NCBI RefSeq assembly: GCF_016433145.1
Contig: NC_058134.1
Span: 107,961,791-108,025,790, forward strand
DNA from: Gracilinanus agilis
Lineage: Eukaryota
Direction of reading: 5' to 3'
DNA length: 64,000 nucleotides
Part shown: in pieces, positions 4,218 through 56,575 of the stretch
Layout of the letters: each line of letters starts with the position of its first letter
Numbering within the stretch: the first letter of the stretch is position 1
Position numbers and translations under genes: made by a program
Notes under the pieces: generated by a model
What the model saw: only the letters and a program-made list of their open reading frames with translations
What the model was told of the DNA's origin: nothing
Databases searched by the model: none

Positions 4218-5144
4218 ATGCTGAATTTAAGCCAAGTTGGGGTTTTGTTTGTAGTCTCCACTGAATTGTTTCTGGGAACTTGGCTAAATGGATTCATTGT
4301 GTTGTTGCACTGTATCACTTGGGTCAGGACTAGGAAAATATCTTTGTCTGACTTCATCATCCTGAACCTGGCTCTTTCCACATTCATCCTGCAGGGGATA
4401 CCAATAATGGACATTATTTTACAAGTTTTCTATCCCCATTTCCATGGCCTAAACACATTTATGAGAATTATTGATATTTTCTGGATATTTACCAATAATC
4501 TTAGCATCTGCCTGACTACTTGCCTCAATGTCTTCTACTGCCTGAAGATTGCCAACTTCTCCCATCAAACTTTCCTCTGGCTCAAGTGGAGGTTTTCCCA
4601 TGTGGTTGTCTGGAGTCTTCTGGGCTCTGTGCCCTATTCCTTCTTCAGCACACTGGCATTGATCCTGAAGTTTAATGTTTATTCTAACCTCAATCAAATA
4701 AAACTCTTAGGAAACTGCACTGAAGATGACAAAAGAAAGACAATTGGATATTTTGTCATGTATATTCTTAGTGCCCTCTACTCAGTCATTCCCCTCTTCT
4801 TGTCCCTGTTCTCCTCTGTCCTTCTGATCCTTTCCCTGATGAGACATACCAGGCAGATGCAACATTATGCCAATGGCACCAGGGACTTGAGCACCACGGC
4901 CCATGTGAGAGCCACCAAAGCCATCCTTTCATCTCTCTTGTTCTTACTTGGATACTTCCTTGTCTTCTTTCTTGCTATGTCTAGTCATTTCTTGCCAGAC
5001 CCTAGTATGGCAGGAACAACTAGCATACTGATTTTTGCTGCTAATCCCTCTATTCAAACTTTTGTTCTTATCCTGGAAAACCAGAAGCTAAAGCAAGCAT
5101 TCCTAAGGATGTTCCAGGTCAAAAAGTGGAGGCTGAAATGTTAA
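4218..5144 (+). CDS. TAS2R3: Bitter taste receptor, TAS2R3-like copy 1 (308 aa)
   Basis: Intact single-exon 7TM ORF with TAS2R motifs SLSDFII.NLAL, YCLKIANFSH..FLWLKWR, LILSLMRHTRQM, RDLSTTAHVRA, and an ECL2 sequon NCT. Confidence 0.9.
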   Translation: MLNLSQVGVLFVVSTELFLGTWLNGFIVLLHCITWVRTRKISLSDFIILNLALSTFILQGIPIMDIILQVFYPHFHGLNTFMRIIDIFWIFTNNLSICLTTCLNVFYCLKIANFSHQTFLWLKWRFSHVVVWSLLGSVPYSFFSTLALILKFNVYSNLNQIKLLGNCTEDDKRKTIGYFVMYILSALYSVIPLFLSLFSSVLLILSLMRHTRQMQHYANGTRDLSTTAHVRATKAILSSLLFLLGYFLVFFLAMSSHFLPDPSMAGTTSILIFAANPSIQTFVLILENQKLKQAFLRMFQVKKWRLKC

Positions 5145-5284
5145 ACCTTGGAAACTTTCATTTAAGTCTTGAGAAAAGAATTGCACTGTCTTTCAACCTG
5201 TCTCGAGTCTAAGTGATTTTATTATGTTCTTCTCCTGTCTCTTCCCCTTGCATAACACTATTTTCTGCTTTGATAAAAATTAAG

Positions 5285-5465
5285 AAGGTACTGTGATATC
5301 CTGGAAAGAGTCATACAATTGGATCCAAAAGACTTGGATTATTGTCTCTGCTTAACTTCATGATATTGAACAACTTATTTTACACCTCTGAGCCTTAATT
5401 CCATTTTCCACAAAAAGGTTATCTTGGATGAGATGATCCCTAAAGTCTCTTGCAGTTTTCAAACC
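5285..5465 (+). mobile_element. MIR SINE in the 3' UTR (paralogs near 14735-14900, 28290-28470, 36995-37170, 56735-56910)
   Basis: ggaaagag...ttggatccaaaagacttggatt...ctctgagcctt...ttggatgagatgatccctaaagtc. Confidence 0.65.
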
Positions 5466-5676
5466 CAATTATTGTAACTTCTTAGGAAAGAAACATGGAT
5501 TCAACCCATTTCATGCTCTCTCTTCCTTCCAATGCATCTAACCGTTGTTGAAGTCAAAACTTGCCAGTGATTCTGCATGTATTTTAGAATCAACAAAAAC
5601 ACAAACTCCCACTCTCTAGAACACTTTGACGTAACCAAATTTCTAACTCTCTGTTCATTGTCTTTAGTCATATGTG

Positions 5677-5682
5677 AATAAA
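5677..5682 (+). terminator. candidate polyA signal of copy 1
   Basis: AATAAA 533 nt after the stop, in a 'tttagtcacatgtgAATAAA' context shared with copies 3, 4 and 5. Confidence 0.5.
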
Positions 5683-5805
5683 TCACATTTTTAAAAAAAA
5701 TTATAATATAGCCACATTAAGATTTTTACCAGCTCCAACCAGTTCTGTTTAGGCTGAGAGAATTGACAGACTACAGCTCAAAGTTACTTTAAAAGTCAAC
5801 TAGTC

Positions 5806-5908
5806 TGTGTGCAAGTCACTTGACCCCCATTGCCTATCCTTACCACTCTTCTGCCTTGGAGCCAATGCACAGTATTGACTCCAAGATGGAAGGTAAGGGT
5901 TTAAAAAA
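5806..5908 (+). mobile_element. 5'-truncated SINE1_Mdo-like SINE
   Basis: gcaagtcacttgacccccattgcc...ggaaggtaagggtttaaaa with a 15-bp TSD aaaagtcaa(c/t)tagtc at 5791-5805 and 5909-5923. Confidence 0.85.
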
Positions 5909-13673: not shown

Positions 13674-14624
13674 ATGTCAAGTTTACAGGTAATGGTTGTA
13701 TGTGTAATCTCCACTGAGTTCTTTCTGGGAACTTGTTTAAATGGCTTCATTGTGTTGCTGCACTGTATCATTTGGGCCAAGACCAGGAAAATTGCTTTGT
13801 CTGACTTCATCATTCTGAATCTGGCTCTCTCCAGGATCATCCTACTTGGGATAATAATGTTTGATATTATTTTATCCGCATTCTATCCCCATTTACATAA
13901 TGCAGGTATATTGATGCAAATTATTGATATTTTCTGGATGTTTACCAACAACTTAATCATCTGCCTGACCACCTGCCTCAATGTCCTCTACTGCCTGAAA
14001 ATTGCCAACTTCTCCCATCAAGCCTTCCTCTGGCTCAAATGGAGGGTTTCTCATGTGATTTGGGGCATTTTTCGGGGCTCTGGGCTCTATTCCTTCTTCA
14101 GCACACTGGCACTGATTCTGAAATTCAGTGATTATTCTGACCTCAATCAAGTGAAACTCTCAGGAAATGTCAGTGAAGAAGTCAAGAAAAAGTTAACTAA
14201 TTATTACATCTTACATTTTTTGGGTCTCCTCTGGTCAGTTATTCCTCTCTGTGTGTCTCTGCTCTCCTCTGTCCTGCTCTTTCTCTCCCTGGGCAGACAT
14301 TCCAGGCAGATGAAGCATCATACCAGGGGCACCAGGGACCTGAGCACCATGGCCCATGTAAGAGCCACCAAAGCCATTCTCTCTTCTTTCATACTCTTCA
14401 TTGGATACTTCCTAAACTTATTTCTTGTCATGTCTAATCATTTCTTTCCAAAACCCATTCTGGCAGTGATGACTTGGGGACTGTTTTTTACTGCTTATCC
14501 CTCTATTCAAACCTTCGTTCTAATCCTGGAGAACCAGAAGCTAAAACAAGCATTCCTCAGGATGTTCCAGGTCAAAAAATGGAGGCTGAAATGTAGGTCT
14601 AGGGAACTTTCATCCAAACCTTGA
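13674..14624 (+). CDS. TAS2R3: Bitter taste receptor, TAS2R3-like copy 2 (316 aa, longer C-tail)
   Basis: First ATG at 13674 (the ORF track starts at an upstream GTG). HNAGILMQIIDIFWMFTNN, VLYCLKIANFSHQAFLWLKWRVS and LSLGRHSRQM closely resemble human TAS2R3 as I recall it. Sequon NVS. Confidence 0.92.
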   Translation: MSSLQVMVVCVISTEFFLGTCLNGFIVLLHCIIWAKTRKIALSDFIILNLALSRIILLGIIMFDIILSAFYPHLHNAGILMQIIDIFWMFTNNLIICLTTCLNVLYCLKIANFSHQAFLWLKWRVSHVIWGIFRGSGLYSFFSTLALILKFSDYSDLNQVKLSGNVSEEVKKKLTNYYILHFLGLLWSVIPLCVSLLSSVLLFLSLGRHSRQMKHHTRGTRDLSTMAHVRATKAILSSFILFIGYFLNLFLVMSNHFFPKPILAVMTWGLFFTAYPSIQTFVLILENQKLKQAFLRMFQVKKWRLKCRSRELSSKP

Positions 14625-15196: not shown

Positions 15197-15384
15197 TTTT
15201 TTTTTAACCCTTAACTTCTGTGTATTGGCTCCTTGGTGGAAGAGTGGCAAGGGTGGGCAATGGGGGTCAAGTGACTTGCCCAGGGTCACACAGCTGGGAC
15301 ATGTCTGAGGGCAGATTTGAACCCAGGACTGGACCTCCTATCTCTAGGCCTGACTCTCAATCCACTGAGCTACCCAGCTGCCCC
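15197..15384 (-). mobile_element. near full-length SINE1_Mdo-like SINE
   Basis: Ends ...ccactgagctacccagctgcccc. TSD taagaacaat(g/a)ctct at 15183-15197 and 15385-15399. Confidence 0.9.
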
Positions 15385-17077
15385 TAAGAACAATACTCTT
15401 GATGTCCTCCTATTTCTTCAGTAGCACCATAGTCAACAAGATAAAGCAACAAATTCAATAATAGCTGAGAAAGGACATGAGGATTCAACTACTAGAAACA
15501 AAACAGAAACACGCCTGAGAGCCAAGCTATGCAAAAGAGTTCACAGTTGAAAACAACCCAGCAATGATATCATTTGAGAGAGTATGGAACAGCAGCTTGT
15601 CTCATCTAAGATTCAAATGTAAAAGAGGATTGTCACACTATGATTTGAATATTCAGTGTGGGATTTTTTGGAATGTGGTGTCACTATAATGTTTATAGAT
15701 ATCTCTCTGGTTCTTCCTGCTCTTAAATGAATTTAAGTAATATTTTTTGCATACATTTAGAATCATTGAGGCTTTTCACTAGTCAAAATATAGCACCAAA
15801 GCATTCAGGGTTTGCTGCTAATAACTATGTATAATTGTTATTTATGATGAGCAATGATTTTGAATGGATGGATGACTCAGAGATTATCTCAAATTATCTC
15901 AAATCTGCAATAGCTTTCTGCAGGCTCACTCTTAGTGGAACTCTGGATATTACATGTACAACAATCACAAGTTCTTTGTGTATTGTTGTATACTGTACCT
16001 ATAAAACTCTGACAACAGCAATTCCTTTCATAGCATCCAGTTCATGGTTTCCATAATTCTTTCTTAAGATGCATATCAGGATATATTTGCATCCTAAATT
16101 TTGTAGCTACAAGTGCTGTTTTCTCTTACTCTGAAGAATAACAATTTAATAAATATAGCTTGCTACAGTAAATATACCAATAGTCAAACACATAATAATA
16201 CCGTAAAGCCTTTATTTATCCTGAGGATCTTTGTGTATTGGAAAGTTATTCCCCATCTACTATAGAATCATAGAAAGCATTCATTTGTAGAATCCCCCCC
16301 CCCCCAGAGGAAAACTCTTAAACACCACATTAAGGCATTTGATACTCACTCTGAGAGAATGAACAAACACCATTTTACTAACTTTTTTACTTGCCAAGAA
16401 AGTTTAGAAACTCAACTCCCTAGAACATGTATGCCCATATCTATGGGTTAGTATCCTGTTAAGTGTTCATTGTATCTGTATTTCTTTTGTTTTCACTCCT
16501 AAAACTTTCTGAGCTTTCCTCCTTTCTCCCTCAATAAAAACTTCTTAGATAAATGTCTGTCTGGGCCTAAATGCACTTATAGCACCTGACTTGTGGAAGA
16601 GACCCTTTATATCCTCTGTTTTAGCTAACTGAACAAATCAGGAAACATTACAAACTCATACGTTTATTCCTCTCAACTAATTACTGAGTTCAAAGATGCA
16701 AATTCTTACATTTCAGGAAGAAGAAGCAGATAACAGTTATCTCATCCTGAAACCCTAGAAAAGAAGGAACATTTCTAATACTTTAGAGATAAGATTTAGC
16801 CTATAAAAATGGAAAGATGAGAAACTATCTTTGGAATTACTGTATCATCACTCCAGTAAGGGAACTGGCATACTATTATCCTTCTCTGAGCACATATTTG
16901 TCAGTCTGCAGAATCCCACTCTCATCTCCAGAATACAGCAGAATATCCTTTAACAAATCTCTAGCACATCCTTCTCTTTTATGTGGATGCTGAGTGATCA
17001 CATAAACAATATTCAAAGAGGTATTTGCCCCCAAAAGGAATTGAAATGGGTAAGAGAAACTTATAGATTCTTTTTCT

Positions 17078-17840
17078 TATCTTATTAGGACTTAATTTTT
17101 CCCAATTACATGTAAACAAGAATTTCAACCTTTATTTTTAAAACTTTTGAACCCCAAACTGTCTCCCTCCTTCTGTTCCTTCACTCCTCATTGAATGAAG
17201 GCAAGCAATTTGATATAGGGTATGCATATAGTCAGGCAAAGTATATTTTCATATTATTCTTGTTGTAAAAAAAACCCACAACCTTTCCTCACAAAAAAGA
17301 AAATAAAGTTTTAAAATAGTATGTTTTGGAAAGCACTGAGACTCCAACAGTTCTTTCTCTGGAAGTGGATAGGATTGTTCATCATGAGTCCTTCGGAATG
17401 GTCTTGGATCATTGTTTGGCTGAGAATACCTATCCATCCACAGTTAATCAGTGTACAATATTGCAATTTCTGTTTTCTATGGTTACCTGGAACTACTCAT
17501 TTCACTTTGTACCAATTCATGAGTCTTTCCAGGTTTTTCTGGGAGCATCCATTTTTTATAGCTCAATAATATTCCATCACATTCATATAACACAACTTGT
17601 TCAGTCATTCTCCAATTGATTGATATTCCTTCCATTTCTAATTCTTTCTACCACAAAAAGAGGTATTATGAATATTAATATATATTTCTTTTGTGTGTTT
17701 TTGTATCTCTTTGGAACAAACTTAGTGGTATAACTGAGTCAAAGAGAATGCACACTTTTAAAGATCTCTGGGCATTGTTCCAAATTGCTCTCCAGATTAG
17801 TTGGATCAGTTCACAATTCTAAAAACAATGCTTTAGGGTT
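17078..17840 (-). mobile_element. L1 3' end, reverse; shared by units 2, 3 and 4
   Basis: ttcccaattacatgtaa...gcaatttgatatagg...ttcagtcattctccaattgat. Homologous at 32470-33166 and 49225-49998. Confidence 0.8.
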
Positions 17841-18855
17841 TCAAACATATAGCTAGCTTTCCTTTCTTTTAAAGGTATATAATAAATTCAACACATAACC
17901 TTCAAAACTTCATTGCTTATCTTTTTCCTTCTGAACTTCCTTCACTTCTCTTCAATGCAATGTTTAAATATGAAACTAATAAATGAAATAAAAAAGAAAA
18001 TGAAATCTACTAAAATAATGGGCAAAAGCAGGAATAACTAGAGCATCTACTCAATAGAAGCAAATTGTAGGACTAATAAAAATAGTACAGTTCACCCATG
18101 AACTTCTGATCTGTTGGAGAGCATGTGAACACAGATATAAACCAAGCAGAGAGGTGAATGAGTAGGGAAATCCCTATATCTGAAGTCACATCTGATCCTA
18201 AATAACAAGCCTTCTTGTCCTCTGTATGTTTAGAGAACCTGTATCATTCCAAAAAATATCCCCTGTGAATAAGGGGTCAATCATCCTCACAAACTGATAT
18301 TCAAATAACACCTTGGAATTACACAAGCCAACCTAAAAGAATCACCATAAGCTCTGAGAGGCAAGAGAAAATATGTGCCAGAAGAATTAAACCATCCAAC
18401 ATTTCCTCTCATACCTAGATGGAAACTATCTAAGACTGTGAATACTGAAGCCTTGAGAATAGCAGTATCTCCATGAACCCTGGAATTACCTTTCATCTCA
18501 GATCTTACTTTTCTTAAAAGCAACAACACACATTGCTGATCAACTGCTACCAAATAGCAGTTAAGATCAAGAGTCTCAGAAATGGCAGCAACCCTCCTTT
18601 CCCCAAAAAATTACTAATCCTACTTCCAGTCCAAACCCCAAAACTGCTATCCCAGGAAGCACCTACTTTGAAGATGACGCCTGGAAACTATAGCTAAAGA
18701 TGCCATAGCTACAATCTATGAAATACTCAAAAAAGAAATTTCCAGCCACCAATACCTTGACTGTAAAATGACATTAAAGACACAGGATTACCAACTACTT
18801 TGCTGCTGTGCCCTAAGGGCTATGGTACCTTTATAAAATCTCTAATTTAAAAATC

Positions 18856-19378
18856 TTGCTTCTTGGAAGGAAAGCTATAGTAAATCCAAACAGCATACTA
18901 AAAAGCAGAGACATCCTGTTGTTGACAAAGGTCCAGATAGTCAAACCTAAAGCTTTTCCAGTATGTATTGTTGTAGGAGTTGGACTATGAGGAAAGCCGA
19001 GAACTACAAAGACAATGTTTTTGAGTTGTGGTGCTGGAGAAGACAGTTGTGAATCCTTTATAATGCAAGAAGATCAAACAAGTCAATACTCAAAGAAAAT
19101 AATTCAGACTACTCTCTGAAAGGTCAAATACAGAAGCTGAAACTTAAATACTTTAGCCACATAATGAGAACACAGGATTCTGGAAAAGACTCTGAGCTTG
19201 AGAGACATTGAAGGCAAAATGAAAAGAGGATGGTAGAACATGAGATGGATACATGGAGTCATGGAAACAATGAACATGTATTGGACAGACTTTGAGAGAT
19301 AGTGTAGATAGAAGGGCCTGGTTGCATGGCCCAAGGAGTCATAAAGAGTTGAATATATTTGAATTAGTGAACAATAAC
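18856..19378 (+). mobile_element. BovB-like RTE 3' fragment
   Basis: ggaaggaaagctatagtaaatccaaacagcatactaaaaagcagagacatc (GRKA..N..SILKSRDI) through gagttgtggtgctggagaagac to the RTE tail. Confidence 0.9.
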
Positions 19379-21374
19379 CATAGGAGTCTCATAATGGATA
19401 GTAAAAATTCAAAGTTCAAAACACACATTAATTCAAAAGTTATTTGTAAATAGATTTCTGCTTCACTTTAATTTCTGAAACACCCAAGTATCCAATTAGA
19501 TTTTCTAATAAAACTGATTTACCTATTATTTTAAAACTTTTGTCTTTCCCATGAATCGGGAAAGAGTTAACACAAAATATAAAGTAATTTTTATTTTACT
19601 TCACTGTCACTCCTTAGAACTTCTCTCTAATTAGAAAAATAACCTTCTGTTTTTGCCTGCAAAAGAATGATTCTGAGGCATGGGAAATGCTCTCAATTCC
19701 TTTAAAACAAATTCTAATGCATGTTAAAACCAAAACTGACTAGAATATTTAAGCATTTCATAAAAACCCATTTAAACCATGATTTGTAAATTCACAAGAG
19801 TGATCTTTCATTTTAGACACAAACTCAGTTTCTAAATAGTTTATGATGAGAAAACATGTAATCTAAGGGAAAAGATTCTCTTATTTCTTATCTATCTTTC
19901 CCTCCTCACTATCTAAAACTGACTCATATTTTGGAATGTAAGAAGGAGAGATTTGTGGTTAAAGCTTAAAGAATTTTTTTTTAATTTTCCATCTAGGTTA
20001 CATGAACACATGATTCTAAAAACAACCACAATAAAATGACATAGGCAGATCACGTACAGGCCCAGTTATAAACATACAGCCGTGAGTACCAATATTTCTT
20101 TACTGCTGAGGCTATAGTTACCAACCTTAATTACCTCCCCCATTAAAAGAAAGCATTTGCTGGTTCATTTTAACTCATTAACAATCTTTACATATTGCCT
20201 TATATAATCTACTACTGCACACCTTCCTCTCTCAAACACATACTAAACAAAGTTGCTCTATAATTTTTTATCTTCCTAAAGACCTTGCTGACTAGAGAAC
20301 AATGTTGTAGTATGTCACTAAGCCCCTAAGTCCAATTTGAAGCAAGAAATGGACTGAAAACAAGACACCATTCCAGGTGAAAATATATCATTTCTTCAAC
20401 CCTACTTCCCAACAAAAAAAAATTTGGAGAGCATCACACAGGAGCAAATCAAAGTATACGTGGTTAGGAAAACAGGACTTTCTTCTTTGGAACTTCAGAA
20501 AATGTCAAATGGCAAGCTCTTCCTCTACCATCCAAAAAAAAAAAGAAATGAAGGTCTTCATTGGAGATTAAAAACACATTTTATATCTCAGTGAATATCT
20601 TTCAATCCTGGGAAGAGAGATCTTTGAAGGATGAATTACTTTCAAAATATGTCCCTGGAAAAGTAGCAGCTTTTAAATATTGCCAATTATTTACAAATCT
20701 TATAACTTATAAACATATAAACTAGTACACAAAACAAATACAAAAGAGTACATACAAAATTATTCACTCACCTGCTTTCACTTGAAGAAAAAATGATTGG
20801 AGAGAGCCAAACTACAGCAATAGAATCCCTAATAGAATATCTCCATTTGTGCAAAATTATAACACTTGAGCCCTATAGAATAGGGGAGGTCTTGATAAAG
20901 ATCTGGACTGTAGCACTTCTTTTCCTGACTTCTATCTTGATCTATCACTTTTAAAATCTAACAAAAAGAAATCCTGTGGCAAATCCCTGAGCAAAATAAC
21001 ATTTATTTCATTATTGAGTCAAGCTCAATGTCAATAAATGGGTCAGAGGCTTGCTCCCATTTATGCCAAAGACCCCAACCAAAACAATAATTCTCCTGTT
21101 TTATGTTTTGAGAAGTAAAGAACAAAAAACAGGACTGGGTAGATAATATCAAGGGATTAAAGGTAGCATGACTGCTTACAAAGCTAAAGTATAACTAACA
21201 TTATTGGTTGGAAGTCTGATAATCTGCTAGCTATGATCCTACCTTCACTTCTTCTCTCATAAAAATGAGAAGTACTCAATACTTGAGTGCAAGTGTGAGA
21301 TAGTGGTCTAGACTTGAGGTCAGCAATCCAGAGATCCTTGACCAGTAGCTGCTTGTATAAATATGCAAGGCCCA

Positions 21375-21572
21375 GAAGTGGCAAAATAGCTCAATGGATT
21401 GAGAGCCAAGCTTGGAGATGAGAGGTTCTGGCATCAAATCTAACTACACAGTTCTTATCTTTGTGATCCTGGGAAAGTCACTTAACTCTCACTGCCTAGC
21501 CCTTCCCACTCTTCTGTCTTGAAACCAAAACACAGAATTGATTCTAAGACAGAAGGTAAGGGTTGAAAAAAA
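21375..21572 (+). mobile_element. older SINE1_Mdo-like SINE (paralog 53302-53500)
   Basis: agctcaatggattgagagcc...gggaaagtcacttaac...gaaggtaagggttgaaaaaa. Confidence 0.75.
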
Positions 21573-21792
21573 TATATGAGGCCCTTTGGGTTCACCTCCT
21601 CCCTGAGATGAGCTAAATTCCTTGCAGCAAGAACAAATCAGTGACTAACAAGAGAGATGGATTTCTAAAATTAACCCATTATAAGCCATCTGAATTCTGA
21701 ACTAAGTTCAGAGACAAGGAACTAAGATTTAAACAATTATAAGATAAAAGCAGCTAAATGACAAAATCAATTACTTGTAAAAAGAATCAACA

Positions 21793-22712
21793 GATCTCCT
21801 AAGCAAATTGGCTGCCACCATCCAATGTCAACCAGATGGACAAATTTATCTCCACCTACCCAAGAGATCTCTAAAACACCATTCCATTTCATTTTTAGAC
21901 CCATGTAGTGAGGAACCATTATACCAATCAACTGACAACATCTATAAGATTCCTGATGATATTCCTGATTACGTGTGGGCTAAAAATTCAAATGAGGTGG
22001 ACAGAATTTTATCAGCAGAATCAGTAAAAAATAGAGGTAAAAGAAGGTTTACCTCCAAGAATTCCTCAGTTCAGACTTAACTAAGAGGCGATAGAGGGAG
22101 TGAAACCCATCATAGAGAGATTATTAAAGCAGAGTATATTAAAATATGGCTTTTCACAATATAATACACCAATCATGCCAGTAAAGAAAGCCAAATTATC
22201 TCCTGATGGGAAGACTCAATGGCGTTTAGTACAAGATCTCAGAGCAATAAACAACCATGTGCAAAAGACCTATGCCATGGTACCAAGTCCATCACAAATC
22301 ATAGAAGCAATACCACCTGAAGCTGCTTGGTTTACTGTTCTGGACATGAGCTCTGTGTACTTCTCTGTTCCCCTGCACAGAGACAGCCAGAAGCTGTTTG
22401 CTTTCACATGGGAAGGCAAATCCATCCAATGGACCCATTTGCTCCAGGGTTTTTCAGATTCAGCTTTGGTCTACTGTCAAATCCTACAAAGAGACCTTGA
22501 GTTGATCACTTTCCAAAACAGCAAAATGGTACATTATGTTGATGACATCCTGCTAATGCCACCATCTGCTGAAGTCTGTTATAAAGATAGTGTACACTTA
22601 ATAAAAGAGCTAGGCAAAAGGGGCCATAAAATTTCAAAATAAAACTTCAATTTGTGAAAACCAAAAAAAAAAAAAAGAAAGAAAAAAGAAAGAAAAAAAA
22701 GTAGATTATTTA
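21793..22712 (+). pseudogene. pol: ERV pol fragment (protease end and reverse transcriptase N-terminal half), disrupted
   Basis: NTPIMPVKK, WRLVQDLRAIN, FTVLD, FAFTWEG, LLQGFSDS, YVDD. Frameshift near 22030, stops at 22082 and 22640, A-tract expansion 22663-22700, then VDYL. Confidence 0.92.
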
Positions 22713-22714
22713 GA

Positions 22715-23113
22715 ATTGATCCTTGGTTCCATGTCACTCATGTCAAGCCAGCAAAAGACATGTCCCAACAACAACCACGAGACCCAGTTATTATACAGCA
22801 CAAAGATCAACTAGCACCAACCAATCAGTCAAATATAGCCTCAGAAAGTCCACAATCTATACATGAGATCACAGAACCAGAGCAGCAATCAGAACTACAA
22901 TCAGAGCATGAATCAGAACCAGAATTAGACCAAGAATCAGTTAACAATCAGATAGTACACCAAATTTTCTACCCAAATGATTATCCCAATCCCAATTACC
23001 ACTTAGAAGAATCATCCGTATACAATTATGACAATGAAAAAGAATCAGCGACAGAAGACACAACATTTGATTTGCAATCAATCAAAGACCTAGAAAATGA
23101 TATTGATGAATAA
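22715..23113 (+). pseudogene. ERV integrase C-terminus with a long acidic extension
   Basis: IDPWFHVTHVKPAK (retroviral IN W.H.SHVK motif) is in frame with ORF 22760-23113. Confidence 0.7.
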
Positions 23114-24359
23114 ATGAAAGCACAAAGACTATCATGAACTCTTTTATTGCCTATAATAATCTTTACTAAACAGCAAAGAAAAAAGAAAGAAGAAAAAATT
23201 AATCACATTTGATAGACATTTAAACTTTGTTCCTGACATAAGTCAACACACTAGAACATCAGTTCCAGTGCAAGATGACAAGCGCAGGATTACATCAAAC
23301 GACACAAATGAGGCATTGTTGACTTCACAGATTATCACGAGGACAGCAAACCTGAGAACTACAAAAGACATCCATGACCGAATACACCGATTGTATGGGA
23401 CAACAACCACAGTGTGAAGAGGAGCATTGGATCAGTATTGGACCCATGCATTTGAAGAACATAACTTACACCCAACAGAATTCTCACTGCATCCAACACT
23501 TTAGATTCCATCCACACAGTACATACACTTTGCAGAAGAATTCCGGTGGAGTAAGTATGTAGCACTTCATTACACATATAGGTCACACTAGACAACACAT
23601 AGAACATTTTCTAACTTCACATCTACATGTGAAATACCAAACTTACACTTAAGAGAGAAGCTTGTCTGCCTTAGTATAGTTTTTCCTCTTACTTTGGTTC
23701 AGACACCTTCTACTCAAATCACCTGACATTTCTTGTAAAAATGTAAATATGTATATTTTGCTTACTAACCCTTAGCAATAAGTTTTACTAACATACAGGG
23801 ACATCTAGTCAGTTTAATAAGTTAGAACAGGGACAGAATTTTCTAAACTTTCTTTGCATATAGCATAAGTCTATGGTTTAACCGAAAGACTTTCAAATAA
23901 TTATAGTCTTACTTAGTCTTACTAACGTTTCTAACATAGCCATAAGTGTACTAACATATTCATATACTAATTTTAGAAAATGAATTAATATTTAGTAGCT
24001 TCAATTGCAGAATTTTTTTAGTTAATATTTTTCTTGTTAGTTCATAAAATTAGATAGATACATAGATAGAATTTATTACTTTGTTTTAGTTAACAAATGC
24101 AACCTTTAAGAATGTTTGTGAATGTTTGCATTTAATCTATTTTTCCTTTCAGTTGAAAATTTTTGCAAAACTCAAAACCCCCATTCCTTTCCTATGCCTT
24201 TCCCATAACCCATCTTAGTATTAGTTTAGTCTAGTCTTAGCATAGTTTAGGGTAAGTAAACCTTTTCTTATTTTGGGAAACTTAGTTAGGGATAAAAGCT
24301 TAGTCAGAATTCAGCTTAGAATAAGAGTAGTAACCCCGTAGATTTTAGGAACCAGAAAA

Positions 24360-25484
24360 TGTTACAAACTGCAAATTTTCGAAAGACAAATGAGCAGATT
24401 GTAATGCAAAAGATGCAAGAGAGGGTTTGCTCTTGCTGGGGGACCAACTGAAAACTTGGGGCAGTTGAGTCTTAGAATTCTGGGAGAAAGATCAGTTGGT
24501 CCCTGAGGTTTGAAAAGAGCGGAAGGATCAACCAAAGCTCTATTTTGGCTTTCAGTTTGCTTTTGCCTGTGCCTTGCCTTTGGATAATTTGAAACTAGCT
24601 AATTTTTCTGGACCTCTTCCTGACCTTCTCCATATTATTTCCCTGTTTTCCCTGCCTGTGTTCCCGAGGCTCTGGGAGGCAGGGTGGCTTTGGGGTTTTT
24701 ACTGAAAAGACCTTGTGGGTTTAGTTTTCCCCAAAAGGCAAGTAGGACATCCTTGAATTCAAATTATCCCTTTAGTATACCCTCTACCTTAAAGCAGCCA
24801 AGTCTTCCTCAGCTGAGAGAGCAGGCTCTCTCTCAGTCTAACCCATTCCCGAGACCCTCCCCGATCTTGAGTTTCTCCCTAGAAGTTGTTAAAACCCCAA
24901 TCCCCTCTCTCCTTCCAGACCACCCAGAAACATTAATAAAACCCTTGGTTACCTAATTAGACCCTCTGGAGAATCTTTGTGTTGAAGAAACTAGGCAAAG
25001 ATGAAGTGGAAGGAATAATTATCTTTTCTTTCTTGAGGGAAACTAGAGGCATCCACCTTGGGAGGAAGTACTTGCCCAATGCTAACTCCTGTATTCCTTC
25101 AGTTTCACTGACAGGGAGGAGGCTTGTGATTACTCCTTTGAAGACTTGAGAAACTGACAAGAAAACCCTCAAGTCAGATACAAACCATTTTTGTCTGGCC
25201 CTGTTCCTTGTGTCTGTAAAAGTACCTTTCCTGCCTGGATGGGTTCAGTCTATTACCCCAATATCCTCTGTCTCTAGCCTGAGTGTCTAGTCTGTGTCAG
25301 CTGCCTCTCCTGAACACCTCACCTGTACCCTTATCATCCTGATACCACCTTATCCATTCCTCCCTAAATCCAGCCATCCCTTTCATTCCTCTCCTATTAC
25401 CTCAATCACCTTTTACCCCTCTGTCACTCAGTAAAGGAAGGAGATCACCCCAAACTTCAGCGTACCCTCATTTTATCCATAACA
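24360..25484 (+). mobile_element. 3' LTR of the truncated ERV (5' boundary uncertain)
   Basis: tgtta...taaca inverted termini, AATAAA near 24935. The right end coincides with resumption of host sequence. Confidence 0.55.
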
Positions 25485-35935: not shown

Positions 35936-36859
35936 ATGCCGAGTTTAGGTGAACTTGTAGCCTTTGTTGTGACCTCCATTATGTTCTTTCTGGGTGCTTG
36001 GATAAATGGCTTCATCGTGTTGCTGCACTGTATCAATTGGGTCAGAAATAGGAAAATTTCTTTTTCTGACTTCATCATTCTGAATCTGGCTCTCTCCAGA
36101 ATCATCCTGCAAGGGTTACCAATGGTAGATATTGTGTTAAAGATATTTTATCCCCATTTACATCACATAAATTTGTATGTGAAAATTCTCGATATTTTCT
36201 GGTGGTTTACCAACAACTTAAGCATCTGCCTGACGACCTGCCTCAGTGTCCTCTACTGCCTGAAGATTGCCAACTTCTCCAACCAGGCCTTCCTCTGGCT
36301 CAAGAGGAGGGTTTCTCATGTGATTGTCTGGATTCTTGTGGGATCTGTGTTCTATTCCTTCACTATATTGGCACTGATTCTAAAATACCATGTTTATTCT
36401 GCCATGAGTCAATTGAAATTCTCAGAAAACTATACTGAAGAAGTCAAAAGAATAAAAACTCATTATTATTTCTTGCATTTTCTTGGTACTCTCTGGTCAC
36501 TCATTCCACTCTCCTTGTCCCTGACCTCATCTGTCCTGCTCATTCTCTCCCTGGTGAGACATACCAGGCACATGAAACATCATTCCATTGGCATGAGGGA
36601 TCTGAGCACCATGGCCCATGTGAGAGCTACCAAAGTCATCCTTTCTTCTTTCATACTCTTCATTGGATACCTCCTAGTCTTCTTTCTTGCTATGTCTACT
36701 TATTTCTTTCTAGCCACTAAGATGTCAGAGATGATTACCTTACTGATTTTCACAATTTATCCCTCAATCCAAACCTTCACTCTAATCCTGGAAAATCAGA
36801 AGCTGAAGCAGGCATTCCTCAGGATATTCCAGGTCAAAAAGTGGAGGCTAAAATGTTAG
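35936..36859 (+). CDS. TAS2R3: Bitter taste receptor, TAS2R3-like copy 4 (307 aa; closest paralog of copy 3)
   Basis: First ATG at 35936. Intact ORF with sequon NYT and TM7 YPSIQTF. Confidence 0.9.
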   Translation: MPSLGELVAFVVTSIMFFLGAWINGFIVLLHCINWVRNRKISFSDFIILNLALSRIILQGLPMVDIVLKIFYPHLHHINLYVKILDIFWWFTNNLSICLTTCLSVLYCLKIANFSNQAFLWLKRRVSHVIVWILVGSVFYSFTILALILKYHVYSAMSQLKFSENYTEEVKRIKTHYYFLHFLGTLWSLIPLSLSLTSSVLLILSLVRHTRHMKHHSIGMRDLSTMAHVRATKVILSSFILFIGYLLVFFLAMSTYFFLATKMSEMITLLIFTIYPSIQTFTLILENQKLKQAFLRIFQVKKWRLKC

Positions 36860-37383
36860 ACATTGGGAACTTTCATCCAAGTCTTGAGAAAAAGTTCACT
36901 AACTTTCAAACTCTCTCAGGAATGGGTTCTTTTATTATTTTTTTCCATCTTTTGTACTCCATAACATTACTTTTTCCCTGATAAAAATTAAAGAGGTAAT
37001 ATGATATAATGGAAAGAGCCTCAGAATTGAATCCAAAGAATTGGATTACCCTCTCTCCTTATCTTTGAGAACTTATACATGTTATTTTATACTCCTCAGC
37101 CTTTGTTCCATCAGCTACAAAAAAGATAATCTTTGATGATAGGATCATTGAATTCATTGAAGTTTTAAAATACAATTATTATAACCTCTTAAGACACAGA
37201 TAAGGATTCAATCTCTTTCCATCTCTCTCTCCTCCAGTGAATCTCACCCTCAATGAAGTCCAAATTTATCATTGATTCTATATGGAACTCAGTGTGCATG
37301 AAAATAAAAATTCCCATATTCTGGAAGAAGTCCTTGATAGCAACAAAATTTATCATTCTGTACATTGTCTTTAGTCACATGTG

Positions 37384-37389
37384 AATAAA
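37384..37389 (+). terminator. candidate polyA signal of copy 4
   Basis: AATAAA 525 nt after the stop, in the conserved context. Confidence 0.5.
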
Positions 37390-39800
37390 ATTATAATTTA
37401 ATGAAAACCATTGTAATATGATCATGTTGGGAATATTTACATATGTAGGACATAGTTCTGACTAGGCTAAGAAATGGTTGATAGAACGATATCTCAAAAA
37501 TATTTTTTTTTCAAAAAACCCTTAACTTTTGAGAAAACTTCTAACTTTTTGAGGAAAAAAAAGCCCTTAACTTTTATTTTTATAAACAAAACAAAGTATA
37601 GCTTCCAAGGTAGAAAAGTGGTTAGAAGAACCCAATAGAGGTCAAATGACTTGCCCAGAGTCACAGAGCTAGGTAAGCATTGGCTGTGGCCAGATTTAAA
37701 CCCAGGAAATCCTGTCTCTAAGGTTGGCTTGCAAGGAAAATGGGAGTTAAGTCATTTCAGTGACTTGTTTAAGATTTCATAGTCTTTAATCATTGAGAGA
37801 AGCATTTAAAATCAGTCCTCTGTCAATGGAGCCATGGACTATGAAGACCCTTTCTTCTGTGCCTCACTGAACTCGGTCACCCACTTTCATTATACTATAG
37901 TCAATCCATAGGGCTATTATGTTTGTTTTATGAATTGATAAAACCATATCAATTACTAGAGATGACATTTATAGTTAATAGAGATTATTGACAGATAGAG
38001 GAGAATTACATAGTTACCCAATAATTACCCAAGTGCTAATGCAAAGTAAAATGAGAAATAATAGGATGCTTCCTCTGTTAATTCCTGGATGGACAGATGG
38101 AGAGATAGTCTCAACAATAATCAGAAAGATATAAATTATTTTGCCAGTATCCAGCTTTCCTGTTCTCCTTTTTCCTTCCTTTCCTTTGCATTTACTTGCA
38201 AAAATAGATTTCTAGAAGGAAGATGAATTCTGATAGGTGAGTTTGTAAACAATCCTCCAACACAAAGCAATCCCTGATCTAGTACTAGTTCAAGTGGCAT
38301 ATTCTAATTCTCAAATTCTATTATCCCCTAGTACCATAGGTACCTAGATAAACAGATAAATTACCTACTGGCTGAGAAAGGACATGAAGATTCACCCACT
38401 GGGAACAGAAGAGAGTCATGCCTGAGAGCCAAGCTATGCAAAGAAGGTCACAGTAGAAAGCAAGCCAGCAATGATATCAGTTGAGAGAATTTGGTGTCTC
38501 ATCTAAGACTCAGATATAAAAAAGAATCATCACAATAGGATTTGAATATTTAGTGTGGAATTTTGTGGAATGTAGTATCACCATTATGTTTATTGATATT
38601 TCTTTGCTTCTTCTTGTTTTAATAAAAAAAATTCACAGTACCAGATCTTAAAACTGTAGTAAAGCAGTGGTCATCAAAATAATCTGGTATTAAAAGATAG
38701 AAGGGTGGATCAATGGAATAGACTGGTGGTAAATAACCTCATTAATCTTGTGTTTGATAAACCCAAAGATACCAGCTTTCAGCATAAGAACCTACAATTT
38801 GACAAAAACTGCTAGGAAAATAAAAAAACAGTATGGCAAAAATTAGGCTTAGATCAATATCTTATACTCTATACCATCAAGTTCAAATGGGTTTATGATT
38901 TAAATATAAAGAATGATATTATAAATAAATTAGGTGAACATGAAATAGTATACTTGTCAGATCTATGGAGAAGGAAAGAATTTAAGATCAAGCAAGAGAT
39001 AGAGAATATTACAAGATATAAAATGAATAATTCTGATCATGTTAAATTTAAAAAGTTTTGTACAAACAAAACCATTGCTACCAAAATTAGAAGGGAAACA
39101 AACTGGAGAAAATATTTATAACAAAATTCTCTGACAAAAGTCTAATTTCTCAAAAATACAAAGAATTAAGTCAAATTTATAAGAAATCAAATCATTCCCC
39201 ATTTAACAAATGGTCAAGGGATATGAATAGAGAGTTTTCAGATGAAGAAATCAAAGCTATCAATAATCATATGAAAAAATGTTCTAAGTTCCTCCTGATT
39301 AGAGAAATGCAAATCAAAACAACCCTGAGGTACCACCTGACACCTAGCAGAGTGGCCAATATGACAGTAAAGGTAAATAAATGTTGGATGGGATATAGTA
39401 AACTTGGAACATCAATGCATTGCTGATAGAGTTGTGAATTGATCCAACCATTCTGGAAGGCAATTTGGAATTATGTCCAAAGAGCTTTAAAAGAATACTT
39501 GTCCTTTTATCCAGCAATACCTCTACTGGGTTTGCATTCCAAAGATATAAAAAAAAATGGGAAAGGTTCTATTTGTACAAAAATATTTATAGCTGCCCTT
39601 TTTGTGGTGTCTAAAAATTAGAAAATGAGTGGATGTCCCTTGACTGGGGAATAGCTGAACAAATGGTGGTATATGATTGTGATTGTGCTATAAGGAATGA
39701 TAAACTGCTTGATTTCTATAAGAACTGGAAAGACTTACATGAACTGATGCAGAGTGAAATAAGCAGAACTCAGTAATTAAAACACTGTGGGGAAAATAAA

Positions 39801-53500: not shown

Positions 53501-53884
53501 ATATATAAGGATGATCTCTCTTTGTGTTTCCCTCCCCCCAAGATCAGCTAAATTCCTTGCAGTAAGAATAGATCAGTAACTAGCAAGAGAAATGGATTTC
53601 TAAAATTAGCCCTTTAAAAGCCAGCTGAATTCTGAACTAAGTTCAGAGTCAAGAAACCAAGACTTAAAGCAATTTTAAGATTGAAGGGGCTACAGGACAA
53701 AATCAATTACTTGTAAATTGGTTCAACAAGAAAATGATACAGAATGGATTTCAATCTTCTCAACAACAAAGATTAAGTCATTTTTCACAATAGGGCTAAG
53801 AACTTGGATCTATGATTTCTTTGGTATAGGAAATTTCTGAACAAGAAACCACACATGGTCTATGCAGGTAGTTCTCTTCTATTT

Positions 53885-54063
53885 TTTTAAACCCTTAACT
53901 TCTGTGTATTGGGTCATAGGTGGAAGAGTGGTAAGGGTGGGCAATGGGGGTCAAGTGACTTGCCCAGGGTCACACAGCTGTCTGTGTCTGAGGCCAGATT
54001 TGAACCTAGGACCTCCCATCTCTAGGCCCTACTCTCAATCCACTGAGCTACCCAGCTGCCCCC
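53885..54063 (-). mobile_element. SINE1_Mdo-like SINE specific to unit 5
   Basis: TSD ttctcttctattt at 53872-53884 and 54066-54078. Confidence 0.9.
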
Positions 54064-55351
54064 TCTTCTCTTCTATTTAGAGAGAGTAACCTACACAACT
54101 GAGGTATTAAGCGTTAATCAGCCTAGATGTGTCAAATATAACACTTGAACCCAGGTCTTCCTGGGTCTGAGACCAGCTCCCTCTCCTTTTCATTTGCCCC
54201 TTGATTGATAACAAAGTGAATTGTGGAAGCTCCTGAATTTTACCTGTAAGTTCTTATTACTTTAAATTTTGTAATAAATTGTGTCTTATGTTATAAGAAA
54301 AAAATCTAAAGATTCAGAGATATTATGTTATAAGAAAAAAATTGGATCCCATTATTTCGGTATATCATCAATACTCCACTCTGTGAATAACAATGTGTCT
54401 TCTCCTCTCTTTATGGTATTTACCTATGCCTCCTATGGAATACTTCTCCACTGCAGAAGAAAATGGCATTCCAGTATCTTTGCCTACAAAATCCAATGAA
54501 CAGTGTGATACATAGAGTCACAAAGAGATGGACACAACTAAATGACTGAACAACAACCACCAATAGAATATGAAATCTACCTCCCTGTATGTTTGACCCA
54601 AAAGCACATTTCTTAGAGTAAAATGAGACCTCAGCTTTTTAATGATTTGATGCTCTCTCTTCACTGTGGTTCTCCTGTACCTTGAAACAATGATTCCTCA
54701 TCTCTGAATGGCTCTAAGAAAATAATCATTTTTAATGTAGTACTCTAAGGTTTGCAGAGTGTTTTGTTATTATTCTCAAAATCAATGTGTTGGGCACCAT
54801 CAAAATGGTTAAATTATCAGAAAATTATGAAGTTTTACTAATATAAATAATACAAAAGAAGATGTATTAGAATTTCTCTTGCTTGCCAACCTAAGTACTA
54901 CTGAATTTTTTCTTCTATCTGACTTGAAACTGAACCTTGTGTGGTTTTTCTGTCTATCAGAATATTCTTTCCTTGAGAATAGAATTGTCTCACCTTTCTA
55001 CTTGTATCTCCAGCCCTCATATGTTAAGTGCTTTTTTATTCGTTGATGTCTACATTATCTCATTGATTCTTACAACAACCCTATAAAGTAGGTGCAATTA
55101 TTTTCCTGAGATTCAGAGAGCTTAAATAACTTGCACACTATCACACAGATAATAAGCATCAGAAGCAGAATTTGAATTCATTTCTTCCTGATCTCAAGTC
55201 CAACACTCTATCCTGGGGCCCTGATGCTTCTCCCTCTGGATAGCTGGCATGGAAATCTAATATCTGTGTGGACCTGCAACCTTTGGATTTCAAATACTAA
55301 TACTTTCTTCCCTGTGACTCTGTCCCCTCCCTTCTCTGTCATACTGCACCA

Positions 55352-55359
55352 ATTTGCAT
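55352..55359. promoter_or_regulatory. octamer motif ATTTGCAT, -297 from the copy 5 ATG
   Basis: Exact octamer at the conserved position. Confidence 0.55.
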
Positions 55360-55648
55360 CCCAGTATAGAGTAGCTCAGTCTTTTCTCTGATCAGTTGAA
55401 TCTAGGGTCTGGACTCCAGAAACACCTGTAGATCTTAATCTGAATGAATCAAGATAGTTGCTGTAGAGCTGATCACAAGAACTTCTGGGTCCTTTCTGGA
55501 CAGTGACAGAAGCATTCCCAAGACTAAGAAGGGAAAATCACCACCATAGTTGAATAGCTGGCATTTCTGTCTTCCTGACAGTATTCAGGGAAGATAGAAG
55601 AAAAAAAAAAGCAAGGAGAACCAGGGTGAGGTTTTGCCATCCACAGAC

Positions 55649-56575
55649 ATGACAAATCTTATATTAGTAGTAGTAATTTTGTTTGTGACCTTCATTATTT
55701 TCTTTCTGAGTACTTGGATAAATGGCTTCATTGTGTTGCTGCGATATATTACTTGGGTCAGAGACAGGAAAATTTCTTTGTCTGACTTTATCATCCTGAA
55801 CCTGGCTCTCTCCAGGATCATCCTGCATGGGATACCAATGATGGTTTTCGCTGTAACCATATTTTATCCCCATTTCCATCACTTGGATATATTTTTGTAT
55901 ATTGTTGATATTTTCTGGATGTTTACCAACAACTTAAACATCTCTCTGACCTCTTGCCTCAATGTCTTCTACTGCCTGAAGATTGCCAGTTTCTCCCATA
56001 AGGCTTTCCTCTGGCTCAAGAGAAAAATATCTCATGTGGTTGTCTGGATTCTTCTGGGATCTCTGCTCTATTCCTGCTTCAGCACACTGGCATTGGTCCT
56101 GAAATTCCATGTTTATTCTGACATGAGTCAAATGATACGCTCAAGAAACGACACTGAAGAAATCAGAAGAATAAAAACTCACTATTATCTCTTGCATTTT
56201 CTTGGTACTCTCTGGTCATTCATTCCATTCTCCTTGTCCCTGCTCTCCTCTGTCCTGCTCATTCTCTCCCTAGTGAGACATACCAAGCAGATGAAGCATC
56301 ATTCCACTGGCACCAAGGATCTAAGTACCATGGCCCATGTGAGAGCCACCAAAGTCATCCTCTTTTCTTTCATACTCTTCATTGGATACCTCCTCACCTT
56401 CTTTCTTGCTATGTATAGTTTTTTCTTTCCACATTTTCTGCTGGTAATGATTTTGTCACTAATTTTCACAGTTTTTTCCTCTGTTCAAACCTTTACTCTA
56501 ATCCTGGAAAATCAGAAGCTAAAGCAAGAATTCCTCTGGATGTTTCAGGTCATAAAGAGGAGGCCAAAATGTTAG
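55649..56575 (+). CDS. TAS2R3: Bitter taste receptor, TAS2R3-like copy 5 (308 aa)
   Basis: First ATG at 55649 (the track's start is a TTG). Intact ORF with LALSRI, FYCLKIASFSH, LSLVRHTKQM, KDLSTMAHVRA and sequon NDT. Confidence 0.88.
   Translation: MTNLILVVVILFVTFIIFFLSTWINGFIVLLRYITWVRDRKISLSDFIILNLALSRIILHGIPMMVFAVTIFYPHFHHLDIFLYIVDIFWMFTNNLNISLTSCLNVFYCLKIASFSHKAFLWLKRKISHVVVWILLGSLLYSCFSTLALVLKFHVYSDMSQMIRSRNDTEEIRRIKTHYYLLHFLGTLWSFIPFSLSLLSSVLLILSLVRHTKQMKHHSTGTKDLSTMAHVRATKVILFSFILFIGYLLTFFLAMYSFFFPHFLLVMILSLIFTVFSSVQTFTLILENQKLKQEFLWMFQVIKRRPKC

What the first reader, a model, noticed from the sequence alone, without database searches (positions are those of the whole stretch)
4218..56575. 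Five intact, diverged TAS2R3-like genes in tandem
Seen: five same-strand single-exon ORFs of 307-316 aa, none with a stop or frameshift, all keeping an ECL2 N-x-S/T sequon (NCT, NVS, NYT, NYT, NDT). Established: this glycosylation site matters for TAS2R surface expression, and human has a single TAS2R3 next to TAS2R4 and TAS2R5. Inference: a marsupial-lineage expansion of TAS2R3. Five of five intact copies amid heavy TE traffic suggests selection for a diversified bitter repertoire.
Basis: partly seen in the sequence, partly recalled or inferred. Interest (0 to 1): 0.7.

Follow-up and report, generated by a model that had tools for sequence, protein, structure and literature searches.

The report
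Opossum bitter-taste receptor gene array
Five working-looking bitter-taste receptor genes sit head-to-tail in this opossum window; they are one branch of the TAS2R3-type gene expansion already described in the laboratory opossum, so the finding is real but ordinary.

Summary
The window has exactly five + strand single-exon ORFs of 307-316 aa. Each is a full-length TAS2R (Pfam E 1e-75 to 1e-83) and each carries one N-x-S/T site in extracellular loop 2. There are no further TAS2R fragments.

The window is most likely Gracilinanus agilis, an American opossum. In an ML tree, all marsupial "TAS2R3-like" proteins form the sister clade of eutherian TAS2R3. The five genes fall in a didelphid-only subclade (99/94) beside a clade with one gene per Australian or Chilean marsupial. 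Four of them pair with Monodelphis genes (T2R3F, T2R3H and two others). Most duplications therefore predate the split of the two opossums. This expansion is already on record as Modo-T2R3A-J.

Staying intact is not chance: random substitution would keep all lineages open with P about 3e-8, and the only coding indels are in frame. Omega is 0.35 in the cytoplasmic half (p = 2e-9) and 1.3 in the extracellular half (not significant). That is the usual TAS2R pattern.

Whole 8-19 kb units were duplicated. Each carries a conserved upstream block with an invariant ATTTGCAT 291-297 bp before the ATG.

Synteny, expression and ligands could not be tested.

The parts
4218..5144 (+). g1: intact single-exon TAS2R3-type gene, 308 aa. 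It has the longest branch and no Monodelphis partner among the hits.
13674..14624 (+). g2: intact TAS2R3-type gene, 316 aa with a 9-residue C-terminal extension. Orthologue of Modo-T2R3F (84% identity, 100/100).
27226..28149 (+). g3: intact TAS2R3-type gene, 307 aa. Nearest to G. agilis P0014 (92%), then Modo-T2R3H.
35936..36859 (+). g4: intact TAS2R3-type gene, 307 aa. It is 88% identical to g3 and pairs with Monodelphis P0013 (100/81).
55649..56575 (+). g5: intact TAS2R3-type gene, 308 aa. Orthologue of Monodelphis P0018, which NCBI labels 'LOW QUALITY PROTEIN' (100/100).
4713..4721 (+). ECL2 N-glycosylation sequon NCT of g1. The others are at 14166-14174 (NVS), 27718-27726 (NYT), 36428-36436 (NYT) and 56147-56155 (NDT).
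3927..3934 (+). Invariant octamer ATTTGCAT inside a conserved upstream block, 291 bp before the ATG of g1. The same motif lies at 13381-13388 (-293), 26932-26939 (-294), 35640-35647 (-296) and 55352-55359 (-297). The block runs about 30 nt upstream and 45 nt downstream of the octamer.
26020..29304 (+). g3 duplication unit, collinear with the g4 unit 34786-38069 (85.6% over 3.4 kb). Flanks have 17 gap events and the CDS has none.
34786..38069 (+). g4 duplication unit, partner of 26020-29304. It is also collinear with the g5 unit 54440-56918 (79%).
15384..21792 (+). Spacer after g2. It is homologous to the spacers after g1 (6201-8146), g3 (30434-34746), g5 (56982-59641) and before g5 (48173-53728). 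Whole units, not just genes, were duplicated.
21793..25487 (+). Retroelement insertion that interrupts the g2-g3 spacer relative to the homologous g4-g5 spacer. An ORF at 22100-22642 has a reverse-transcriptase domain.

Best explanation
The five ORFs are functional bitter-taste receptor genes (class T GPCRs). They form part of a tandem array that grew by unequal crossing-over of 8-19 kb units in the American-opossum (didelphid) lineage. All derive from a single gene of the marsupial ancestor, and Australian and Chilean marsupials still hold that gene as one copy. That gene was itself one of at least four marsupial co-orthologues of the single eutherian TAS2R3. At least three of the duplications (giving g1, g2, g5 and the g3/g4 stem) predate the Gracilinanus-Monodelphis split. 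The g3/g4 duplication is close to that split. Each unit took along its own roughly 385-bp upstream region with a conserved octamer-bearing block, so each copy can be transcribed on its own (inferred). Selection keeps every copy open and keeps the cytoplasmic, G-protein-facing half nearly unchanged. The extracellular, ligand-facing half changes at or above the neutral rate. The likely result is a set of receptors with different tastant ranges that signal through the same pathway (inferred, not shown).
For: Family: full-length Pfam TAS2R in all five. The AlphaFold model of g4 has 7 TM helices plus helix 8 (pTM 0.74), and its 20 best PDB fold matches are all TAS2R14/46/4/16 (TM 0.69-0.80). Clade: careful ML tree and a reduced tree. 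The didelphid clade has support 99/94 and 100/99. Orthologue pairs are g2-Modo_T2R3F 100/100, g5-P0018 100/100 and g4-P0013 100/81. Eight australidelphian species have one gene each. Unit duplication: collinear self-matches of genes and spacers. Selection: omega is 0.80 overall, 0.35 in the inner half (LRT p=2e-9) and 1.33 in the outer half (p=0.08). P(all stay open) is about 3e-8, and about 34 indels are expected against in-frame gaps only. On the young g3 and g4 branches, 16 of 19 and 12 of 17 replacements lie in the outer half. Upstream block: 77% of columns are invariant against 54% at third codon positions (p=3e-5), with an invariant octamer at -291 to -297. Origin: the window's proteins sit on a contig of 313,333,276 bp, the same length as the contig that holds the annotated G. 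agilis T2R3-like proteins P0025 and P0058.
Against: There is no expression evidence: no RNA run holds the stretch. No ligand data exist for any marsupial T2R3-type receptor that I found. Whole-gene omega (0.80) is not significantly below 1 (p=0.05), and Biopython YN00 gives pairwise values of 0.75-1.19, so amino-acid constraint is weak overall. The inner/outer split rests on halving the helices of a medium-confidence model (pLDDT 76). The outgroup holds only T2R7/8/25-type proteins, so monophyly with TAS2R3 was not tested against all TAS2R families. g3 has radical changes at otherwise conserved sites (M253K in TM6, P276L in TM7, G219D). The Monodelphis partner of g5 is flagged 'LOW QUALITY', so this lineage may be decaying in the sister species.
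Confidence: 0.85

Rival explanations
1. Assembly artefact: the 'copies' are haplotypes or mis-joined duplicates of fewer real genes.
For: One further G. agilis protein (P0014, 92% identical to g3) sits on contigs of only about 7.9 kb, so the region is not perfectly assembled. Short contigs of run X1 carry variant letters at about 2% of places on the g3 unit.
Against: The copies differ by 7.5-23% in coding DNA and 10-30% in flanks, far beyond allelic divergence. Four of them have separate orthologues in Monodelphis. The spacers differ by independent insertions. The X1 variants change g3 residues to those shared by g4 and P0014, which fits paralogue contigs laid on g3. If anything, the assembly misses a copy.
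Confidence: 0.02
2. One or more of the five are open but no longer functional: young pseudogenes that have not yet acquired a stop.
For: g1 has the longest branch (0.27) and no Monodelphis partner. g3 has M253K, P276L and G219D at conserved positions. g3 and g4 lack the pyrimidine-tract-plus-AG that directly precedes the ATG in g1, g2 and g5. The short g3 and g4 branches would stay open by chance with P 0.19-0.34. TAS2R families turn over fast: 19% of opossum T2Rs are pseudogenes (PMC2646699).
Against: The long terminal branches of g1, g2 and g5 would stay open by chance with P of only 0.02-0.05 each. On the g3 and g4 branches, N/S counts of 19/14 and 17/8 give omega of roughly 0.5-0.7, and replacements avoid the cytoplasmic half. 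The upstream block is intact in all five.
Confidence: 0.15
3. The genes belong to another TAS2R clade (for example T2R7-like), and 'TAS2R3-like' is only a naming artefact of automatic annotation.
For: Only T2R7/8/25-type proteins were available as outgroup. Identity to eutherian TAS2R3 is modest at 44-50%. The numbat paper lists only TAS2R1, 2, 4, 38 and 60 as shared marsupial-eutherian orthologues (PMC9650251).
Against: Every eutherian hit down to E 1e-56 is TAS2R3, and T2R7 starts at 1e-54. TAS2R3 plus the marsupial clade has 100/100 support against T2R7/8/25. PDB TAS2R14/43/46/4/16 are much more distant.
Confidence: 0.04
4. The receptors work mainly outside the mouth (gut, airway or thymic tuft cells) rather than in taste.
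For: The invariant upstream octamer is the kind of site bound by POU2F3, the master regulator shared by tuft cells and type II taste cells (established knowledge; papers listed). Mouse Tas2r clusters are expressed in non-gustatory epithelia (title of PMC5670347).
Against: Nothing in the sequence separates oral from extra-oral use, and the two are not exclusive. No expression data exist.
Confidence: 0.1

Closest known systems
Monodelphis domestica Modo-T2R3F, Modo-T2R3H and two unnamed T2R3-like genes (P0004, P0012, P0013, P0018)
   Same: They are direct orthologues of g2, g3, g4 and g5 (80-86% identity; support 100/100, 91/46, 100/81 and 100/100). They have the same length classes, including the 316-317 aa C-terminal extension of g2/T2R3F. 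They belong to the same didelphid-only clade.
   Different: g1 has no Monodelphis partner among the hits. The Monodelphis partner of g5 is flagged LOW QUALITY, whereas g5 is clean. G. agilis has an extra g3-like copy (P0014).
Eutherian TAS2R3 (single gene next to TAS2R4 and TAS2R5 on human 7q34; established knowledge)
   Same: It is the sister clade of the whole marsupial T2R3-type clade. It shares the single-exon layout, a length of about 316 aa, the ECL2 sequon and the invariant family residues.
   Different: Identity is only 44-50%. The relationship is many-to-one, not one-to-one. Synteny was not tested.
Koala TAS2R41 and TAS2R705 tandem expansions (Johnson et al. 2018, as summarised in PMC9650251 and PMC11641376)
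   Same: They are also lineage-specific tandem duplications of a bitter receptor within one marsupial order, read as dietary adaptation.
   Different: They belong to a different TAS2R clade (the TAS2R16/41/60 group) and a different marsupial order. Some koala copies have been deorphanised; no T2R3-type marsupial receptor has been.
Paralogue diversification pattern of mammalian TAS2Rs (higher dN/dS in extracellular than in cytoplasmic regions; Shi et al. 2003, from memory)
   Same: Omega is 1.33 in the outer half against 0.35 in the inner half.
   Different: The excess over 1 in the outer half is not significant here (p=0.08), and only five sequences were available as DNA.

Membership tests
TAS2R / class T GPCR (Pfam PF05296) | Full-length match to the TAS2R profile above the curated cut-off | tested here: met
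   All five score 253-279 bits against a cut-off of 22.2, covering profile positions 1-4 to 302 of 303.
TAS2R / class T GPCR (Pfam PF05296) | Seven-helix fold closest to solved TAS2R structures | tested here: met
   The g4 model has 7 TM helices plus H8. Foldseek ranks 1-20 are TAS2R14/46/4/16 at E 1e-10 to 2e-7, and class A GPCRs appear only from E 3e-5.
TAS2R / class T GPCR (Pfam PF05296) | Intronless coding region of about 300 aa with a very short N-terminus | tested here: met
   The ORFs are uninterrupted at 307-316 aa, and TM1 starts at residue 4.
TAS2R / class T GPCR (Pfam PF05296) | Family-conserved residues (TM1 Asn, TM2 Arg, TM3 Trp/Asn and the LxxxYxxK motif, TM5 Ser/His, TM6 His/Ala) and the ECL2 N-x-S/T site | tested here: met
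   Columns N24, W89, L103, Y107, K110, S205, H209, D222, H228 and A231 are invariant in 71 sequences including the five. R55, N93, N165 and T167 are at least 90% conserved. The sequon is present in all five.
TAS2R / class T GPCR (Pfam PF05296) | Expression in type II taste cells and a response to bitter compounds via gustducin | not testable with these tools
TAS2R3 orthologous group | Closest eutherian family is TAS2R3, and the genes form a clade with it to the exclusion of other TAS2Rs | tested here: met
   See the hit list and the tree with 100/100 support against T2R7/8/25. Other TAS2R families were compared only through PDB E-values.
TAS2R3 orthologous group | One-to-one orthology with eutherian TAS2R3 | tested here: not met
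   The 46 marsupial sequences in at least four old lineages are jointly sister to eutherian TAS2R3. These are co-orthologues.
TAS2R3 orthologous group | Conserved synteny next to TAS2R4/TAS2R5 and SSBP1 | not testable with these tools
Didelphid T2R3F/H-type tandem array | Nested in a clade holding only didelphid genes, with orthologue pairs between Gracilinanus and Monodelphis | tested here: met
   The clade has support 99/94 and 100/99, with three well-supported orthologue pairs. A Gracilinanus-only origin of g3/g4/P0014 is not rejected (p-AU 0.38).

The most novel reading that the evidence does not exclude
The roughly 75-bp upstream block with the invariant ATTTGCAT octamer, at a fixed 291-297 bp before each ATG, may be the core cis-element that switches TAS2R genes on in POU2F3-dependent cells. 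It would travel with every duplication unit.
Probability: 0.3. Interest if true: 0.55.

Novelty: new member of a known kind. Interest (0 to 1): 0.2.

Why it matters
As a gene-family finding it adds little. It shows that the opossum T2R3-type expansion known from Monodelphis is shared with Gracilinanus, and so dates to before these two didelphid genera split. It also shows that Australian and Chilean marsupials kept this particular lineage single-copy. That gives a clean set of 4-6 young paralogues against one orthologue, which could be used to ask how ligand range changes after duplication. The more useful by-product is regulatory. Five paralogues whose coding DNA has diverged by about 20% keep a short upstream block with an octamer at fixed distance. 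That is a small, directly testable candidate for the poorly understood transcriptional control of TAS2R genes.

Tried and rejected
- **Chromosome context:** This left no Monodelphis DNA, no orthologue dN/dS, no chromosome coordinates and no synteny with SSBP1 or TAS2R4.
- **Reads:** only one public run (X1, short Logan contigs) holds the g3 unit, and no RNA run does. Laying it down showed cover over the whole 3.8 kb plus variant letters. These match residues shared by g4 and P0014. This is cross-laying of paralogue contigs, so it is inconclusive for copy number, collapse and expression.
- **Pairwise dN/dS:** NG86 gives 0.44-0.58 and YN00 gives 0.75-1.19. They disagree, so I relied on the ML codon model instead.
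- **Timing of g3/g4:** the AU test cannot tell a duplication before the species split from one after it (p 0.38).
- **Other ORFs:** a Pfam scan of ten other ORFs of at least 90 aa found only one reverse-transcriptase hit. No non-TAS2R host gene was seen.
- **Koala genome paper:** it is not held in the library, so the marsupial orthologous-group names for these genes could not be looked up.
- **Not used:** the large protein-representative search and the protein atlas, because the family is clear.
- **Housekeeping:** the single N at 33167 was left as it is.


Full report
**Observation**

The window has five ORFs of at least 200 aa, all on the + strand. From the first ATG they are:

| Gene | Coordinates | Length (aa) |
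|---|---|---|
| g1 | 4218-5144 | 308 |
| g2 | 13674-14624 | 316 |
| g3 | 27226-28149 | 307 |
| g4 | 35936-36859 | 307 |
| g5 | 55649-56575 | 308 |

Each has only its terminal stop. All five match Pfam TAS2R (PF05296) over the whole profile, with E 5e-75 to 5e-83. tblastn of the five against the window finds no sixth copy or fragment.

In an AlphaFold model of g4 (pLDDT 76, pTM 0.74) the sequon lies between a short helix (152-161) and TM5 (168-216), which is extracellular loop 2. It aligns with the N-x-T of human TAS2R43. The model's 20 best PDB matches are all TAS2R structures.

This Asn/Thr pair is at least 90% conserved in 71 T2R3- and T2R7-type proteins. It is a family feature and says nothing special about these copies. 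Its role in human TAS2R function comes from Reichling et al. 2008, which I know from memory; the reference is listed in PMC12703716.

**Source organism**

The window's five proteins (P0001, P0003, P0015, P0010, P0016) are on a contig of 313,333,276 bp. The contig that carries two annotated Gracilinanus agilis T2R3-like proteins has exactly that length. A third G. agilis protein, P0014, is 92% identical to g3. The window is therefore most likely from G. agilis, an American (didelphid) opossum.

**Which TAS2R**

The nearest proteins are marsupial 'taste receptor type 2 member 3-like' entries at 61-70% identity. Next come eutherian TAS2R3 (44-50%, E 1e-60 to 1e-76), and T2R7 only from 1e-54. Human TAS2R14/43/46/4/16 in the PDB are further away.

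I built a careful ML tree of 71 proteins (IQ-TREE, LG+C20, T2R7/8/25 as outgroup). It shows the following:

- Eutherian TAS2R3 (100/100) is sister to an all-marsupial clade of 46 sequences (98/89). Together they have 100/100 support.
- The marsupial clade holds at least four old lineages that each include both didelphids and australidelphians.
- The five window genes all sit in one of these lineages (18 rows, 100/100).
- In that lineage eight Australian or Chilean species have one gene each (99/97). The didelphids form their own clade of ten (99/94; 100/99 in a reduced tree).
- Orthologue pairs are g2-Modo_T2R3F (100/100), g5-P0018 (100/100), g4-P0013 (100/81) and g3+P0014-Modo_T2R3H (91/46).
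- g1 is the earliest and longest didelphid branch and has no Monodelphis partner among the hits.

AU tests do not reject a Gracilinanus-only origin of g3/g4/P0014 (p 0.38), nor g1 as sister of g2/T2R3F (p 0.26). So at least three duplications lie between the didelphid-australidelphian split and the Gracilinanus-Monodelphis split. The g3/g4 event lies near the latter split.

The marsupial expansion is confirmed but is narrower than stated: it is didelphid.

**Prior knowledge**

The Monodelphis orthologues are already named Modo-T2R3A, F, H and J in public records. Dong et al. [quoted passage not shown] Reviews place Didelphimorphia second among marsupial orders in Tas2r number (PMC11641376). 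I found no paper on Gracilinanus taste receptors. These are therefore new members of a known expansion.

**How the array grew**

Self-comparison shows collinear direct repeats that include both genes and spacers:

- The g3 unit (26020-29304) matches the g4 unit (34786-38069) at 85.6% over 3.4 kb.
- Both match the g5 unit at about 79%.
- The spacers after g1, g2, g3 and g5 and before g5 are mutually homologous at 66-86%.

This is what unequal crossing-over of whole units would produce. Later insertions broke the spacers. Segment 21793-25487 interrupts the g2-g3 spacer relative to its g4-g5 homologue and holds a reverse-transcriptase ORF. Segment 38.6-48.1 kb has no counterpart elsewhere and holds LTR-like direct repeats. 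Homologous spacer sequence continues to both sides of the outermost genes, so the array may extend beyond the window.

**Selection**

- *Coding versus flanking divergence.* Coding DNA is hardly more conserved than the flanks. For g3/g4, K is 0.079 in the CDS against 0.106 and 0.145 in the flanks. For g4/g5, K is 0.198 in the CDS against 0.172 in the 5' flank.
- *Indels.* The flanks carry 16-17 gap events per pair. The CDS alignments carry between 0 and 3, all whole codons.
- *Simulation.* With the ML branch lengths, random substitution would leave all seven branches free of stops with P about 3e-8. At the flank indel rate about 34 indels would be expected.
- *Codon model.* A GY+F3X4 model gives omega 0.80 for the whole gene (p=0.05 against 1). 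For the extracellular halves of the helices plus extracellular loops it gives 1.33 (p=0.08). For the cytoplasmic halves, loops and helix 8 it gives 0.35 (p=2e-9).
- *Young branches.* On the g3 and g4 branches, 16 of 19 and 12 of 17 replacements are in the outer half.

The genes are thus kept open and keep their signalling side, while the ligand side drifts or diversifies. This is the usual TAS2R picture. Positive selection is suggested but not shown. The inner/outer partition is approximate because it comes from a medium-confidence model.

**Haplotype or collapse rival**

The copies differ by 7.5-23% in coding DNA, have separate Monodelphis orthologues and differ by independent insertions. They cannot be haplotypes.

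The one public run that holds the stretch consists of short contigs. These cover the g3 unit and carry variant letters that turn g3 residues into those shared by g4 and P0014. That fits paralogue contigs laid on g3. It settles nothing about copy number. If anything the assembly lacks a copy, since P0014 sits on a 7.9-kb contig.

**Regulation (by-product)**

Aligning 600 bp upstream of the five ATGs shows homology in all five from about -385 to the ATG. In g2 the homology ends at about -385.

Within this region a block of about 75 bp is 77% invariant across the five genes. Third codon positions are 54% invariant (p=3e-5). The block holds an invariant ATTTGCAT at -291, -293, -294, -296 and -297. 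A 12-nt invariant run, CCCTCCCTTCTC, lies about 20 nt upstream of the octamer (17-19 nt between them).

I tested the idea only on this window, where it holds. POU-type motifs are enriched in open chromatin of mouse type II taste cells, and control of Tas2r expression is called poorly understood (PMC10239704). Binding by POU2F3 is inference.

**Limits**

Synteny with TAS2R4/SSBP1, Monodelphis DNA and orthologue dN/dS could not be done.
- No RNA data were found.
- The outgroup sampling is narrow.
- The single N at 33167 was left untouched.

**Verdict**

The finding is an ordinary, already described kind of lineage-specific bitter-receptor expansion.

Noticed in passing
window 3895-3975, 13350-13430, 26900-26980, 35610-35690, 55320-55400 (approximate blocks around the octamers): There is a conserved upstream block with an invariant ATTTGCAT at -291 to -297 of each ATG and an invariant CCCTCCCTTCTC about 20 nt before it (17-19 nt between them). 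The block is more conserved than third codon positions (77% against 54% invariant, p=3e-5). In g2, homology with the other units ends about 385 bp upstream, just beyond this block.
   Followed up: partly
window 4193-4217, 13649-13673, 55624-55648 versus 27201-27225, 35911-35935: g1, g2 and g5 have a pyrimidine tract ending in AG two bases before the ATG (…TATAGAC, …CACAGAC), which looks like a splice acceptor for a 5' non-coding exon. g3 and g4 read …CTGCTAAC there, without the AG.
   Followed up: no
window 21793-25487: A retroelement insertion has boundaries set by the break in homology between the g2-g3 and g4-g5 spacers. An ORF at 22100-22642 has an RVT_1 domain (E 2e-15).
   Followed up: partly
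window 38630-48170, with direct repeats 42040-43239 and 47440-47852: The g4-g5 spacer is about twice as long as the others. About 9.5 kb of it has no counterpart in the other units. It includes an LTR-like pair of direct repeats (88-94% identical, about 5.4 kb apart; the first copy is interrupted by about 790 bp) and a GC-richer stretch at 40-44 kb.
   Followed up: no
protein P0014 (G. agilis, contigs of about 7.9 kb; not in the window): P0014 is a sixth member of this didelphid clade, 92% identical to g3. Its differences from g3 cluster in extracellular loop 2, where P0014 resembles Modo-T2R3H while g3 resembles g4. This hints at gene conversion between g3 and g4, or at an unplaced copy of the array.
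   Followed up: partly
window 14598-14624 (g2) and Monodelphis P0004, P0018: g2, Modo-T2R3F and the Monodelphis partner of g5 read 9 residues past the ...LKC end used by the other copies. The position of the stop has therefore changed more than once in this clade.
   Followed up: no
window 56907-56998: A short AT-rich tandem repeat (periods 19 and 35) lies directly downstream of the g5 unit, at the point where homology to the g3 and g4 units ends.
   Followed up: no
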